A stretch of DNA of 63,767 nucleotides, counting the filler, from Octopus bimaculoides (taxonomy: Eukaryota): the NCBI RefSeq assembly GCF_001194135.2. It is 8 parts of 8 records of this genome, joined end to end, with 100 filler letters (N's around TTAATTAATTAA, not from the genome) between each part and the next. Parts side by side here need not be neighbours in the genome. Positions count along the whole stretch, not along the records: positions 18,340 to 44,416 come from NC_068982.1; 7 more parts are not named here. The stretch is one strand, 5' to 3'. The notes beneath the pieces were generated by a model. It had not been told where the DNA came from. It was given only the letters and a program-made list of their open reading frames with translations, and searched no databases. Shown here piece by piece: positions 27,461 through 37,249 of this stretch. Position numbers and translations under genes: made by a program. Within the stretch, counting starts at the first letter, position 1. Every line of letters starts with the position of its first letter.

Positions 27461-28672
27461 CGAGGGTGGGCTGAAAAGTTCATAGGTTGACTATAAAAGG
27501 AGTGTGATGCTAGAGCTGTGAAATCTTGTAAGCATTAATTTCAACCCTTCTTATTAATAAACTGTTTTGGTTTCTGTCCCAGTAAACTAACATCTTACTA
27601 TTCAAAGACTTCAGAAGTAACTAGTTGCGACTTCTCTTGAAAATGGACAAAATTTGGCATCGTGGTGTTATCAGGTACCTATGGAAAAAGGGTTTAGCCC
27701 CCAAGGACATTGATACTGATATAGCTGTTACATTAGAGGATGACGCGCCAGCTTTATCAACAGTGCAAAAGTGGGTAACTGAATGTAGGTATGGAACGGA
27801 GAGTATTGAAGATGATCCAAGATCTGGACATCCTGCAACTGCCATCAGCAAAGCAAATGTTGATCGTGTTCACCACATGCTGATGGATGGCAAGCGATTG
27901 ACTATAAATAAAATAACGATTACTATTAGCATATTGCGTAAGAGAGTTGTCTTCAGGCACCTGATCAAAAGCGCACTAAAGTGATCACATCGGAGGAAAA
28001 TCTGACATGGTTTAAAGCAGATTCAGCTGGTTTCCTTCGACGTTTTCTAAGCTAGGATGAGTTTCGGGCTCATAACTTTGAGCCTGGGACAAAGAGGTAA
28101 TCCATGAGTGGAAACACGCCTCCTCAACTGTTCCAGGGAAGGCCAACGTCGTTTCATCTGCACGAAAGACGATGGCCTCAGGTTTTGGGAAGCAAAGGGC
28201 ATTAGGCATTGTGTTTCAAAAATACCACACAATCAACGGAGAGTACTATGCCAACTTGCTAAGGTAGATACGAAAGGCTATTAAGACCAAAAGCCCATGG
28301 AAACTGACAAAAGACATTTGTTTCATCAGGAAAAGTCTCCAGTACACATGTCCTTGTCTTCAATGGCTGCTGTGTGTGACTGTGGCTTTGAACTAGTTGA
28401 TCAGCCTCCTTATTCTTCTGACTTAGCTCCATCTGACTATCATCTGTTCCTTAAAATGAAAAAAACACTTGACTAGGAACCAGTATCGCAATGACAATGA
28501 TGAGATTTTTGACCAACACGTTAAAAGCTTCTTCACCAAAGGATCCAAGGACTGCATCACCGATGGAAGACGTGTATGGACCACAAGGGGAACTATGTTG
28601 AGAAATTTATCTCATTAGTCACATTCCATGAGAGTATCTTTGTCAGCCTATGAACTCTTCAGCCGACCCTCG
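27461..28672 (+). mobile_element. Mariner (DD34D-type) transposon, both ends intact, transposase pseudogenised
   Basis: TA-flanked TIRs CGAGGGTGGGCTGAAAAGTTCATAGGTTGAC / GTCAGCCTATGAACTCTTCAGCCGACCCTCG; MDKIWHRGVIRYL..., EDDPRSGHP, YSSDLAPSDYHLF; frameshifts and stops. Confidence 0.95.
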
Positions 28673-32760: not shown

Positions 32761-34215
32761 CAATATTATACGTAGCTCGAGAATAATAGCAATTTAATCA
32801 TTTATGGTAATATAGCAGTCTTTAGCAGCTATACATGGTAACCACATACTTACTGAATTAAATGAATAAATTAGAATCTAATTTGATAAAAGACTTGCAA
32901 CAATGCAACTGGGTACCATGACGTCTCAGTATTTAGCTTATAAAGAGCTGACTTATAATAAAAAGTGACTTTTAAACATAATTTAAAAACTTATAAATTA
33001 ACCACAATTTACATATATCCACATTGGTTCCTATAGATATCTTTCGATATACAATAATTTTTTGAGACAAGGAAACTATGAATATAGACCTGCATGGTTA
33101 GTTTCCCTTGGGATTTGATACGTTTGATCTTAAAATTGAATTTCTGCTGTTTTACTTAGAACTTGCATTGGCGCCGCAATTAGGTATCAACATCTCGTTC
33201 GTCATTAACATTACGAAGCTAAACGCAAACGAAAGTTGTGATATTAAACTGTTAAATCAGGAAGAAAGTTTTACAATCGATTTAGGCAACATTTGAAGCC
33301 TATTTTCAGCGTGGAACAATATTTCTTATGATGTATGATATATTAGCAGTCATTTATAGCCGGATTTCGGCTATTTCCAGTAGCTAACACTAAATGATCG
33401 ATGTTCACAAAAATATTAGTGCAGATTATTGCAACACAGCTTGTAAAAAGTCATGTTAATATAGCATAAGATGCTCTGTCTAAAAGGTTCACCATGATAT
33501 TATTGAACACGGCTAAAAACATTTCTTTATGCTACAAGGCACACCAATTTATTTTTAAAGAAGTGTTTTGATACATAAATAATATTTTATTTTATTTATG
33601 TATATCTTTTTATTTGAAAACAATATTCTCGTTGCACTCCAGAAATGTAACTTACAAAAGTTGTTCTTCCCTTTCACGTTATCTCAATCACTAGCAAACA
33701 TATACAAACGCATTACAGCCTTCACTCAGTAACACCCCACTTTTCATTTCCCATAACGTTACTCCATTTACTTAACAACACGCATCAACATACTATATTC
33801 CTGTCACTCCTCGACTACGCTTCTCCCTCGTCACTACGTTATACCCTTCACTCATTAACAAGACAGCATCTATAAAGTCGATCAACGCACTAAAAAGAGT
33901 AACTAAATCGACTCCAAATCACGCAACTGTTTAAAAAAAAACACCATATTAGAATACAAAAAGACAAGAGAATCAACGTCTCTTGTCTTTTGGTCGTTGA
34001 CAAGGTCACATCATTGATCAAAAAGTCTGCTCAGTCTGAGTTACCTGTAGGTTACTGTTATGTCTCAAGCTACTGCTATCTAGCACCTTCGGATGATCTC
34101 TACTCAACCGCTAAACAACTGCTACTCAACACACCTACCACGGCCAGACTACCTCTATTTATATGTCTTGGGAGATCCTACTTCTTCGCCTGGGGTCGTC
34201 GACACAACAGTTACA

Positions 34216-34301
34216 CAACAACAACAACAACAACAGCAACAACAACAACAACAGCAACAACAACAACAACAGCAACAACAGCAACAACAACAACAATAAC
34301 A
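34216..34301. repeat. (CAA/CAG)n microsatellite
   Basis: Explains the poly-Q, poly-T and poly-N ORFs. Confidence 0.95.
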
Positions 34302-34375
34302 AGTTTCGTACACAAATAAATCATAAGCACTTAATTATCACCACGTTGTCTTTTCTTTGTCGATGGAACGTTTAA

Positions 34376-34575: not shown

Positions 34576-34873
34576 TTTAGCTTACTGAACTTATATCACC
34601 TTCACCGAAACCAGTAGTATACAACCTTTACTTTAAAATAAACAGAAATTCTGTCCTCTAAATATTTATTATGCCTTATCAGTTGCTGAAATTTTGTTGA
34701 AGACTATTAATATTCATAGGTCGTTAGTAATGAACAATGACTAAATTAAAGTTGTAGGTGGACAATGCTTACGAATTGAAATGGAACTGGTTAAGATAAT
34801 TTTCTCACGCTGAAAGAAGGAAAAATAATGTCGCAAAAATTAGTGTAAAGGATTTTTTTTTTTGGTCTACCAT

Positions 34874-34881
34874 TGACGTCA
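34874..34881. promoter_or_regulatory. Palindromic CRE/ATF site TGACGTCA
   Basis: Exact consensus about 155 nt upstream of the beta-tubulin ATG; function not demonstrated. Confidence 0.35.
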
Positions 34882-34994
34882 TAATGACAACGTAAAACGT
34901 AAGAATTTTATTGGAAAATATTCTAACCATAATTTCTATCACTTCTCTCCAATTTTGTTGTCTCTAAAAATCCAGTCTAAAATAAGATACGGAT

Positions 34995-35036: not shown

Positions 35037-36326
35037 ATGAGAGAAATTGTTCATATACAGATCGGACAATGTGGAAACCGCATTGGAGAGAGGTTCTGGG
35101 AATATATTTCGGACGAGCATGGAATTGATCCTCTAGGAAGGTTTAACGGAGATTCAGATCTTCAGATAGAAAGAATCAACGTTTATTTCAATGAGGCACG
35201 AATGGGGAAATACGTACCAAGGGCTATTTTAGTGGATTTAGAGCCTGCAGTATTAGATTCAATAAGAGGATCTCCTTTTGGACAATTATTTCGACCAGAT
35301 AATTTTGTTTTTGGTCAAGGTAGCGCATCAAATAATTGGGCCAAAGGATATTTTACTGAAGGCGCTGAGCTTTGTGATACTGTGTATGATATTGTACGAA
35401 AAGAAGCTGAAGGTTGTGATTGTATTCAAGGATTTCAACTGACTCATTCCATTGGTGGCGGCTCAGGCGGTGGTCTAGGAGCCTTATTAATGAGTAAAAT
35501 AAAAGAAGAATTTTCAGATCGTATTAATCTCAACTTCACTGTTATACCGTCACCGAAGGTCTCCGAAACTGTTGTAGAACCTTACAATGCTGTACTATCG
35601 ATAAACACGCTGGTGGATAATTCTAATGAAACAATGTGCTTTGACAACGAGGCACTTTTTAATATCTGCCATCGCACATTGAAACTGTCGCAACCTAGTT
35701 TAGAAGATCTAAATCACTTAATATCAACGACAATGTCTGGGATGACAACATGTTTTCGATTCCCAGGTCAATTAAACGCTGACCTTCGAAAGCTAGGAGT
35801 TAACATGATCCCATTTCCTCGTCTCCATTTCTTTATTCCGGGGTTCGCTCCTTTAACAGCACGCAGTATACAACCATATCGTGCAATGACAGTCCCAGAA
35901 TTGTCGCAACAAATGTTTGACGCCAAAAATATGATGGTTGCAGCTAACCCGCTAGACGGTCGATATCTATGTGCAGCTTGTATCTTCCGTGGAAGGTTAT
36001 CGATGAAGGAAGTAGATGAGCAGATGTTTAACATTCAAAATAAGAACAGTACATACTTTGTTGAGTGGATTCCGGATAACGTTAAAACTGCTGTGTGTGA
36101 CATACCGCCACGAGGACTTAAGATGTCAGCAACCTTTATTGGTAACTCTACAAGTATTCAAGCCCTTTTTAAGAGAATCATGGAGCAATATGATACAATG
36201 TTACGAAGACGCGCATTCTTGCATTGGTATACTGGAGAAGGAATGGAAGAAATGGAATTCACTGAAGCTGGATCCAATTTGGCTGATCTGATTTCAGAAT
36301 ACCAGCATTATGAGACAGTTCACTAA
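35037..36326 (+). CDS. Divergent intronless beta-tubulin lacking the acidic C-terminal tail (429 aa)
   Basis: Uninterrupted ORF; MREI start, [49 protein letters not shown]; colinear with canonical beta-tubulin numbering; ends EYQHYETVH*. Family certain, orthologue not assignable. Confidence 0.96.
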
Positions 36327-37249
36327 ACTGTACATCCACTGAGAGATTTATCAGACAGAATTTTGTAAATATTGTTGAAAAGAAGGATCTGATGTTAAAT
36401 GGAACGGGCCAGAAAACATGGAGGTTCCTTTGTGTCAGATATTTATTGTGATAAAACCTGATAAATCCTATTAGCTCTCTTCGATAGTTATTCCATTTAT
36501 CGCACTACAGAAATTAGCTAAATATCTTATCAGAGAACTTATTTATTAACATGAGTTTATATTATAATCTCTTTCTCTTTTTTCTTCTCTCCCTCCCTTT
36601 CTCCCTCTCTCTTTCTCTCTCCATAATATATTTCCTCTGCTGGATAAGATATTCATATCTTCATGTTAAACCACCCAACAATTTCTCCCCTTTGTGCTGA
36701 CTACTAAGAGTTTCATGTAGAATGAAATGCTCTTGTTAATTCGTACTCCATAACTCAGGTTCCATTCCTTCTTAAATTACTTCAAAGAAATAGTAATCAA
36801 TGTCCCTAATTTCTTTTCTTCATTCTCTGTCATTCCTGATATTAAATCCAACGTGGACTGGTGAGAGGAAAATATTCTGGTGTATTCTCAAAGAGAAACA
36901 GTGACAGTATCATGATGAGCTGTAGCCAGAAGAGTTTATGTATTTTCAGAGGCAAAGTATAAATGAGTCAAGGAAAGTCAATAAGAGCAAGGAAAGATAG
37001 AACGATACGATGGACCAGCGTCTCGTCCATAAGGGGAATATATGCACCATGGAAACCGGGAAACCGGCTCTTTCAGTCTATGACTCGAGAAGGAACATTA
37101 CTACTTAACTAAAAGCACACGGTGTTAAGTTTACCTCATATCTATATTTATTCTAAACGTGTGAACATATTTTATATACGTGGTATAATACACAAAAACA
37201 TGTACAAAGCCACCAGACAACCGGAAACAAAAGACAATGAGAAAGATAG

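What the first reader, a model, noticed from the sequence alone, without database searches (positions are those of the whole stretch)
35037..36326. Intact beta-tubulin that naturally lacks the acidic C-terminal tail
Seen: a 429-aa ORF without indels relative to canonical beta-tubulin ends ...[10 protein letters not shown], where canonical proteins continue DATAEEEGEF.... No acidic tail appears after the stop in any of the three frames. Known: the E-hook carries polyglutamylation and polyglycylation and is read by kinesins, dynein, MAPs and the severing enzymes spastin and katanin. Helix H12 residues E410, D417 and E421, needed for motor docking, are retained here, as is the MREI autoregulatory N-terminus. 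Inference: this may be a specialised isotype that builds microtubules with no beta-tail code, like a genetically encoded subtilisin-clipped tubulin. It could serve sperm, cilia or neurons.
Basis: partly seen in the sequence, partly recalled or inferred. Interest (0 to 1): 0.85.

Follow-up and report, generated by a model that had tools for sequence, protein, structure and literature searches.

The report
Conserved tail-less beta-tubulin of coleoid cephalopods
This octopus gene encodes a working beta-tubulin that ends where the folded protein ends, without the acidic tail that motors and modifying enzymes read; octopuses and cuttlefish have kept it under strong selection, so it is a natural test of what that tail is for.

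Summary
Window 35037-36326 (+) is an intact, intronless 429-codon beta-tubulin ORF in Octopus bimaculoides. It aligns without gaps to solved beta-tubulins over residues 1-426 and stops at TAA after ...YETVH. No acidic exon follows in the next 8 kb.

It is a functional gene, not a pseudogene. O. sinensis, a third octopod and Argonauta hians have 429-codon orthologues with the same stop position. dN/dS is 0.06-0.08, with synonymous sites saturated against Argonauta. Cuttlefish orthologues (432 aa) end in a glutamate-free stub, DATVDD, so the lineage probably predates the octopus-cuttlefish split.

Tyr222, which latches the T5 loop in GDP-tubulin, is Leu. The T3 loop GAG is SAS and the T2 loop GTM is AVL. 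In octopods the signature GGGTGSG is GGGSGGG.

A perfect CRE (TGACGTCA) upstream is conserved across the octopods, and CRE-like sites sit upstream in the decapodiform genes.

Best reading: a specialised lattice subunit whose beta surface cannot be glutamylated or glycylated, probably with an altered GTP switch. Tissue and biochemistry are untested. I found no paper describing this isotype; the gene models carry only generic names.

The parts
35037..36326 (+). Intronless coding sequence of the tail-less beta-tubulin (429 codons plus TAA)
   Evidence: identical protein P0013 in O. bimaculoides GCA_001194135.2
36324..36326 (+). TAA stop codon directly after helix H12; same position in four octopods, and TAA in all eight coleoid genes read
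   Evidence: AF2 model has H12 as helix 405-427
35247..35255 (+). Codons A71-V72-L73 (T2 loop; canonical G-T-M), shared by the whole clade
35322..35330 (+). Codons S96-A97-S98 (T3 loop, which senses the gamma-phosphate; canonical G-A-G), shared by the whole clade
   Evidence: G98 in 253 of 253 other beta-tubulins, G96 in 249 of 253
35454..35474 (+). Codons 140-146, GGGSGGG in place of the tubulin signature GGGTGSG (octopods only; cuttlefish keep GGGTGSG)
35700..35705 (+). Codons L222-E223 (canonical Y222-G223): loss of the Tyr that latches the T5 loop in GDP-tubulin, shared by the whole clade
   Evidence: role of Tyr222 from PMC7491153
34872..34885 (.). Invariant 14-mer ATTGACGTCATAAT holding a perfect palindromic CRE (TGACGTCA, 34874-34881), 163 nt upstream of the ATG
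   Evidence: the only TGACGTCA in 23 kb of non-N sequence; conserved in O. sinensis, a third octopod and Argonauta; a full CRE or half-sites about 100 nt upstream in decapodiform genes
34965..34992 (+). Proximal upstream block TAAAAATCCAGTCTAAAATAAGATACGG conserved between Octopus and Argonauta (candidate core promoter or 5' UTR)
36390..36457 (+). Conserved 3' UTR block
   Evidence: 74% identity to Argonauta against 52-59% in the flanks; no covariation support for an RNA structure

Best explanation
This is a functional, single-copy, intronless beta-tubulin paralogue found so far only in coleoid cephalopods (octopods and cuttlefish-like decapodiforms). Shown: it keeps the whole tubulin fold and the residues for motor docking on H12 (E410, D417, E421), the lateral-contact Tyr281, Lys252, the Ser172 site and the MREI N-terminus. 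It ends within two residues of helix H12. No clade member has a glutamate beyond H12, so polyglutamylation and polyglycylation of a beta tail are impossible. Inferred: it pairs with an alpha-tubulin and co-assembles into microtubules. Wherever it is incorporated, the lattice has no beta E-hook, so it should be poorly read by factors that depend on the tail, such as beta-tail glutamylases and glycylases, spastin and katanin, and motors whose landing and processivity the tail assists. Also inferred: the nucleotide switch is altered. In the published model, GDP-tubulin holds its T5 loop 'in' through an Asp177-Tyr222(OH) bond, and GTP releases it by moving the T3 loop. Here Tyr222 is Leu, T3 is SAS instead of GAG, T2 is AVL instead of GTM, and in octopods the phosphate loop is GGGSGGG. 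The subunit is therefore probably less dependent on nucleotide state and gives less dynamic polymer. A conserved CRE suggests transcription driven by a CREB/ATF/CREM-type factor in a particular cell type that is not yet identified.
For: Intact ORF and domains. Ungapped match to solved beta-tubulins. AF2 model pTM 0.83, with TM 0.93 to 3jak_B and H12 as helix 405-427. Orthologues of 429 aa in O. sinensis, a third octopod and Argonauta hians, and of 432 aa in cuttlefish. dN/dS is 0.078, 0.081 and 0.064 in octopod pairs and 0.014 in decapodiforms. Identity by codon position against Argonauta is 87/95/59%. There are 20 clade-wide derived residues, and none of 253 other beta-tubulins shares more than 4 of them; NJ bootstrap for the clade is 100%. 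All eight genes stop at TAA, with tails ETV(H/R/Q) or DAT(V/I)DD. There is one uninterrupted tblastn match in each of four genomic loci. Human betaIII truncated at Thr429 still incorporates into microtubules (PMC6070155; Joe et al. 2009 as described in PMC9048481). The Tyr222-Asp177 latch model, and Tyr222 being conserved in animals, come from PMC7491153. The CRE is conserved.
Against: No expression, dimerisation or polymerisation data could be obtained here. Joe et al. (as cited in PMC9048481) found that removing residues 428-429 of mammalian beta-tubulin abolishes assembly. The octopod C-terminus (V428-H429, or a 2-residue deletion if aligned to cuttlefish DATV) sits right at that limit. The pocket changes (T2, T3, T4, Y222) might impair GTP binding or polymerisation rather than tune it. 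In Tetrahymena, deleting the beta tail is not tolerated when it is the only beta-tubulin (PMC9294176), so this isotype probably cannot act alone. Only three 90%-identity clusters of this clade turned up in a database of 5.8 billion proteins. No squid or nautilus orthologue was seen, so the age and spread of the clade rest on few taxa.
Confidence: 0.72

Rival explanations
1. The protein is tubulin-like but is not a normal lattice subunit. Because its exchangeable-site loops and the Tyr222 latch are changed, it could act as a regulator instead: capping or poisoning the plus end, templating nucleation, or working as a non-polymerising tubulin with some other role.
For: Positions that are nearly invariant elsewhere are substituted on the plus-end, nucleotide-facing surface: G96S, G98S, G71A/T72V/M73L, Y222L, and T143S/S145G in octopods. 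The C-terminus lies at the minimum length reported for assembly. The octopod lineage evolves about five times faster than the decapodiform one.
Against: Lateral and longitudinal contact residues and the H12 motor-docking residues are conserved under strong purifying selection. The fold matches lattice beta-tubulin at TM 0.93. Thr143 to Ser keeps the hydroxyl, and cuttlefish keep the canonical GGGTGSG.
Confidence: 0.15
2. It is a dead processed pseudogene (retrocopy) whose reading frame has survived by chance.
For: It is intronless and isolated, with no other called gene within 10 kb in three octopod genomes. It is about 25% diverged from canonical beta-tubulin.
Against: dN/dS is 0.06-0.08 with dS up to 1.3. 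The 429-codon frame is intact in four octopods, and a 432-codon frame is intact in the cuttlefish-like (decapodiform) genes read. Upstream and 3' UTR blocks are conserved.
Confidence: 0.02
3. The acidic tail exists but lies in a downstream exon, or the stop is an assembly or annotation artefact.
For: None found, apart from the many N gaps in this assembly.
Against: The TAA is conserved at the same codon in independent assemblies and read sets. There is no donor consensus near the end of the ORF and no acidic ORF stretch in the 8 kb downstream. A conserved 3' UTR block (36390-36457) begins 64 nt after the stop.
Confidence: 0.03
4. It is the axonemal (sperm-flagellum or ciliary) beta-tubulin of cephalopods.
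For: Intronless, fast-evolving paralogues with CRE promoters are often expressed in testis (general knowledge; the CRE is).
Against: It lacks the C-terminal EGEF-type axoneme motif and every tail glutamate that would be needed for glycylation or glutamylation; motile 9+2 axonemes depend on these (general knowledge; Tetrahymena data in PMC9294176). In Tetrahymena, the tail-motif-less BLT isotypes are excluded from cilia. A role in a non-axonemal spermatid array such as the manchette is not excluded.
Confidence: 0.05

Closest known systems
Canonical metazoan beta-tubulin isotypes (Pfam PF00091 + PF03953; e.g. PDB 3jak_B, 1jff_B)
   Same: Same fold and length up to residue 426 with no indels and about 75% identity. 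MREI, Lys252, Ser172, Tyr281 and E410/D417/E421 are all present.
   Different: No acidic C-terminal tail. GGGSGGG instead of GGGTGSG (octopods). Y222L, G96S, G98S, GTM to AVL, K392R, E412G, and Q15R/K in octopods. It evolves much faster than canonical isotypes.
Engineered or proteolytic tail-less tubulin: betaIII/betaI truncated at Thr429 (Joe et al. 2009; Parker et al. 2018, PMC6070155) and subtilisin-clipped tubulin
   Same: The protein ends at residue 429, the point at which truncated human beta-tubulin still incorporates into microtubules.
   Different: Encoded in the genome, conserved across coleoids, and accompanied by a changed nucleotide pocket. The last residues are ETVH rather than QDAT.
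Tetrahymena beta-like tubulins BLT1/BLT4 (Pucciarelli et al. 2012, reviewed in PMC9294176)
   Same: Divergent beta isotypes whose tails lack the polyglutamylation and polyglycylation motifs, used for particular arrays (nuclear spindles) and absent from cilia.
   Different: An independent origin in a ciliate. The BLTs still have tails; the octopus protein has none.
C. elegans alpha-tubulin TBA-7 and human TUBAL3 (PMC5638583)
   Same: Natural isotypes with short tails lacking glutamylation sites, proposed to tune microtubule stability.
   Different: They are alpha-tubulins and they keep a short tail.
Human TUBB Y222F (skin-creases syndrome) and the natural Phe222 of plant and protist beta-tubulins (PMC7491153)
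   Same: The same position is changed, removing the hydroxyl that binds Asp177 of the T5 loop in GDP-tubulin.
   Different: Here the residue is Leu, so the aromatic ring is lost as well, and the change is fixed in a whole clade together with T2 and T3 changes.

Membership tests
beta-tubulin (eukaryotic tubulin/FtsZ superfamily) | Tubulin GTPase domain plus Tubulin C-terminal domain | tested here: met
   PF00091 205 bits, PF03953 131 bits, both far above their cut-offs
beta-tubulin (eukaryotic tubulin/FtsZ superfamily) | Collinear with solved beta-tubulin chains and same fold | tested here: met
   Ungapped 1-426 to 1-426; AF2 model TM 0.92-0.93 to beta chains
beta-tubulin (eukaryotic tubulin/FtsZ superfamily) | Tubulin signature [SAG]-G-G-T-G-[SA]-G in the T4 loop (PROSITE pattern, recalled from memory) | tested here: not met
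   The window and all four octopods have GGGSGGG. Of 253 other beta-tubulins, 251 have T143, and 219 have S145 and 33 have A145. The cuttlefish orthologues keep GGGTGSG.
beta-tubulin (eukaryotic tubulin/FtsZ superfamily) | Beta-specific N-terminus MREI and Lys (not the alpha catalytic Glu) at position 252 | tested here: met
   M1-R2-E3-I4 and K252 are invariant in the alignment
beta-tubulin (eukaryotic tubulin/FtsZ superfamily) | Acidic, glutamate-rich C-terminal tail beyond H12 | tested here: not met
   The protein ends YETVH*; decapodiform orthologues end DAT(V/I)DD*; there is no Glu beyond H12 in any member
beta-tubulin (eukaryotic tubulin/FtsZ superfamily) | Forms a heterodimer with alpha-tubulin, binds exchangeable GTP and polymerises | not testable with these tools
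   Needs biochemistry; the pocket residues Y222, G96, G98 and T143 are substituted
Axonemal beta-tubulin | C-terminal EGEF-type axoneme motif and tail glutamates for glycylation and glutamylation (motif recalled from memory) | tested here: not met
   No tail at all
Processed retrogene | Intronless copy of a parent gene that contains introns | tested here: inconclusive
   One uninterrupted coding match in O. bimaculoides, O. sinensis, Argonauta and a decapodiform contig. The intron structure of the canonical cephalopod genes could not be examined. No poly(A) remnant or target-site duplication was looked for, nor would one be expected at this age.
CRE-regulated (CREB/ATF/CREM) promoter | Palindromic TGACGTCA close upstream of the gene and conserved | tested here: met
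   34874-34881, the only copy in 23 kb; conserved in four octopods; a full site or half-sites in decapodiforms. Factor binding is not testable here.

The most novel reading that the evidence does not exclude
Coleoid cephalopods carry an ancient (probably more than 250 million years old) beta-tubulin that has lost both regulatory handles of canonical tubulin. It has lost the tail, and with it all glutamylation, glycylation and tail-dependent severing and motor tuning; octopods have also lost the Gln15 polyamination site. It has also lost the Tyr222-Asp177 latch that ties assembly competence to GTP. On this reading it builds 'code-free', intrinsically stable microtubules for one particular cellular structure, and offers a natural system for separating the tail's functions from the body's.
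Probability: 0.3. Interest if true: 0.8.

Novelty: new variant of a known kind. Interest (0 to 1): 0.6.

Why it matters
The beta-tubulin tail is the main substrate of the 'tubulin code'. Its roles have been studied mostly with proteolysed or engineered tubulin. A tail-less beta-tubulin that selection has kept across octopods and cuttlefish shows that animals can use microtubule lattice that is blind to this code. It also gives a ready-made protein, with orthologues in species where genome editing is possible, for asking which motors, MAPs and severing enzymes really need the tail. The accompanying loss of Tyr222 and the changed T2, T3 and T4 loops touch a second open question: how GTP activates tubulin.

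Tried and rejected
1. AF2 with a 7-sequence alignment failed (pLDDT 31.8). It was repeated with 75 sequences.

2. The third database search, with a profile of residues 60-260, returned only fragmentary canonical tubulins and not even the query clade. It says nothing about more distant clade members.

3. Searching papers for the run accessions identified only ERR12945500, as Acanthosepion esculentum. The species and library type of SRR11869390/391/394 and ERR3431203 stay unknown, so the Logan contigs cannot be used as evidence of expression. They carry no poly(A) and include promoter sequence, so they may be genomic.

4. The conserved 3' UTR block was tested for RNA structure and showed no covariation.

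5. There are no tRNA or Rfam hits in the piece.

6. Joe et al. 2009 could not be read; it is cited only through PMC9048481.

7. A squid mantle proteome lists the O. sinensis accession A0A6P7TE58. Only one of its tryptic peptides that could match a squid is specific to the clade, and no peptide table is held. This was rejected as proof of expression.

8. An ovary-biased 'tubulin beta chain-like' gene in O. sinensis could not be linked to this gene.

9. The pseudogene and hidden-exon explanations were rejected (see the rival explanations).

Full report
**Observation.** The ORF is at the stated coordinates: 35037..36326 on the + strand, 429 codons, from ATG to TAA, ending ...[13 protein letters not shown]. 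It carries both tubulin Pfam domains, far above threshold. It aligns to solved beta-tubulin chains as one ungapped stretch, residues 1-426 to 1-426, at about 75% identity. MREI, E410, D417 and E421 are present. Translating the three forward frames after the stop gives no acidic peptide. Scanning all + frames to the end of the piece (44416) finds nothing like a tubulin tail. The last 90 nt of the ORF contain no splice-donor consensus. tblastn finds a single, uninterrupted copy in the piece.

**Source and relatives.** The identical protein is encoded on chromosome CM046602.1 of assembly GCA_001194135.2, at about 179.6 Mb. I recognise that assembly from memory as Octopus bimaculoides.

- The 90%-identity cluster also holds O. 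sinensis XP_029649444.1 ('tubulin beta-2 chain-like', 429 aa). It also holds a 429-aa protein assembled from three read sets of a third octopod, 91% identical at the DNA level.
- Argonauta hians has a 429-aa orthologue at 85% identity, ending YETVQ*.
- A second cluster of 432-aa proteins ends YQDATVDD* or YQDATIDD*. One member comes from reads that a Sepia genome paper identifies as Acanthosepion esculentum. This cluster is therefore from cuttlefish or close decapodiform relatives.
- In a profile search of 5.8 billion proteins, only these three clusters stand above the canonical single-domain beta-tubulins: 944-972 bits against 834 or less.

**Is it one lineage?** All seven clade sequences share twenty derived residues that are rare or absent in 42 full-length canonical beta-tubulins. 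None of 253 other beta-tubulins retrieved shares more than 4 of the 20. Neighbour-joining groups the clade in 500 of 500 bootstrap replicates. The background set holds no canonical cephalopod sequences, so the branching point within molluscs is unknown. Octopus, cuttlefish and canonical sequences are about equally distant, roughly 25% each. That means a short shared stem and long separate branches.

**Selection.** Nei-Gojobori dN/dS values:

| Comparison | dN/dS | dS |
|---|---|---|
| O. bimaculoides vs O. sinensis | 0.078 | 0.10 |
| O. bimaculoides vs third octopod | 0.081 | 0.22 |
| O. bimaculoides vs Argonauta | 0.064 | 1.3 |
| Between the two decapodiform genes | 0.014 | 1.1 |

Identity against Argonauta by codon position is 87%, 95% and 59%. 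All eight genes stop with TAA. The four octopods stop at codon 430 with a variable, non-acidic last residue (H, H, R, Q). The decapodiform genes stop three codons later. The coding region is one uninterrupted match in four genomic loci from three lineages, so the gene is intronless throughout. This excludes a pseudogene and makes a hidden tail exon very unlikely.

**What the C-terminus means.** With a 75-sequence alignment, AF2 gives a tubulin fold (pTM 0.83; TM 0.93 to 3jak_B). H12 is modelled as helix 405-427, so only two residues follow it. Modelled beta chains in solved structures are typically 421-443 residues long, so this protein amounts to the ordered core alone. Neither tail version, ETV(H/R/Q) or DAT(V/I)DD, has a glutamate beyond H12. 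Polyglutamylation and polyglycylation branch from tail glutamates (established knowledge), so neither can occur on this subunit. Human betaIII truncated at Thr429 still enters the microtubule network and does not change the polymer fraction (PMC6070155). According to Ludueña's account of Joe et al. 2009, removing one or two more residues abolishes assembly (PMC9048481). The octopod protein ends at residue 429, right at that limit. If its end is instead aligned to the cuttlefish DATV, it has lost two residues inside QDA.

Several positions that are close to invariant in beta-tubulins are substituted.

- Across the whole clade: G96S and G98S in the T3 loop (G98 in 253 of 253 others), and G71A/T72V/M73L in the T2 loop. 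Y222L also holds across the clade (others: Y in 227, F in 24, L in 2), as do K392R and E412G.
- In octopods only: T143S and S145G, turning the signature GGGTGSG into GGGSGGG, and Q15R/K. Gln15 is the polyamination site named in PMC8987236.
- D177E occurs in Octopus and cuttlefish but not in Argonauta.

Knossow and colleagues propose the following (PMC7491153). In GDP-tubulin the T5 loop is held 'in' by Asp177 bonding the hydroxyl of Tyr222. GTP moves T3 (Asn99), which pushes T5 'out' and makes the plus-end surface competent for elongation. They note that Tyr222 is conserved in animals, that Y222F causes a human disorder with altered microtubule dynamics, and that plants and protists carry Phe. 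A Leu at 222, next to a changed T3 loop, cannot form that latch. My inference is that the subunit depends less on nucleotide state and gives less dynamic polymer. This step is not shown. From memory, V72 and a non-Gly at 98 resemble alpha-tubulin (TVI; AAN). That is a lead only.

**Regulatory flanks.** Synonymous sites between Octopus and Argonauta are saturated, yet three non-coding blocks survive.

- A 14-mer, ATTGACGTCATAAT (34872-34885), contains a perfect CRE. It is the only TGACGTCA in 23 kb of non-N sequence.
- A proximal block lies at 34965-34992.
- A 3' UTR block lies at 36390-36457, with 74% identity against 52-59% in the flanks.

Decapodiform genes carry a full CRE or two ACGTCA half-sites about 100 nt upstream of the ATG. 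This points to control by a CREB/ATF/CREM-type factor. It does not identify the tissue. The 3' UTR block shows no covariation.

**Expression.** I could not establish it. The Logan contigs may be genomic. The O. sinensis accession appears as a separately quantified protein in a jumbo-squid mantle proteome (PMC11070823). Only three of its tryptic peptides could match a squid, and only one, [10 protein letters not shown], is specific to the clade. This is a weak hint at best. A paper on cephalopod beta-tubulin isotypes lists only acidic tails and does not mention this gene (PMC9048481). My literature searches found no description of a naturally tail-less animal beta-tubulin. They covered open-access text only.

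**Comparison with what is known.** It is a beta-tubulin by fold, collinearity, MREI and Lys252. It fails two textbook features: the acidic tail and, in octopods, the signature motif. In function it resembles engineered Thr429-truncated or subtilisin-clipped tubulin. In concept it resembles isotypes that lack tail modification sites: Tetrahymena BLT1/4, which build nuclear spindles and are absent from cilia (PMC9294176), and C. elegans TBA-7 and human TUBAL3 (PMC5638583). It goes further than any of these by having no tail at all on the beta subunit and by also changing the GTP switch. In Tetrahymena a tail-less beta-tubulin is not tolerated as the only beta-tubulin, so this isotype probably works alongside canonical ones.

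**Verdict.** The core of the interpretation (a specialised, selected, tail-less isotype) is supported. The tissue guesses are open, and a ciliary role is unlikely. It is a new variant of a known kind. The gene models are already public but carry only generic names. Interest is moderate to high, because it offers a natural, testable case for two open questions in tubulin biology.

Noticed in passing
window 34872-34885 (CRE at 34874-34881): A perfect palindromic cAMP-response element, the only one in the 23 kb of real sequence. It is invariant in four octopods and matched by CRE-like sites upstream of the decapodiform orthologues.
   Followed up: partly
window 36390-36457: A 3' UTR block conserved between Octopus and Argonauta although synonymous sites are saturated. 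There is no canonical AATAAA nearby and no covariation support for an RNA fold.
   Followed up: partly
window 35079-35081 (codon 15): Gln15, the beta-tubulin polyamination site, is Arg in Octopus and Lys in Argonauta but Gln in cuttlefish. This is a second modification site lost in octopods.
   Followed up: partly
L005 vs L007 (decapodiform orthologues) compared with the octopod genes: The decapodiform gene evolves about five times more slowly (dN/dS 0.014 against 0.06-0.08) and keeps GGGTGSG and a 6-residue stub. The octopod lineage went further in both respects.
   Followed up: partly
L008-L012 about 195 nt upstream of the ATG, against L005/L013: The Acanthosepion esculentum contigs have a TATATAAG box upstream. 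Contigs of the other cuttlefish diverge completely upstream of AAATAATTGTG. This could be an indel, a transposon or a spliced 5' exon; it was not resolved.
   Followed up: no
window 34215-34302: An (ACA)n microsatellite of about 29 copies, roughly 735 nt upstream of the tubulin start. It produces the poly-Q, poly-N and poly-T pseudo-ORFs listed there.
   Followed up: yes
window 27625-27984 (+): A short ORF with weak, sub-threshold similarity to the HTH domain of Mos1/mariner transposase; probably a decayed transposon fragment.
   Followed up: partly
window 18340-44416 generally: No other gene is apparent. There are many N gaps bordered by TA, CA and GA microsatellites. No gene is called within 10 kb of the tubulin in O. 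bimaculoides, O. sinensis or Argonauta, so the gene is isolated.
   Followed up: partly
literature: PMC11070823, PMC11202624: The O. sinensis orthologue's UniProt accession is listed in a Dosidicus gigas mantle proteome (ambiguous cross-species match). An unrelated-looking 'tubulin beta chain-like' gene is strongly ovary-biased in O. sinensis. Neither could be tied to this gene.
   Followed up: partly
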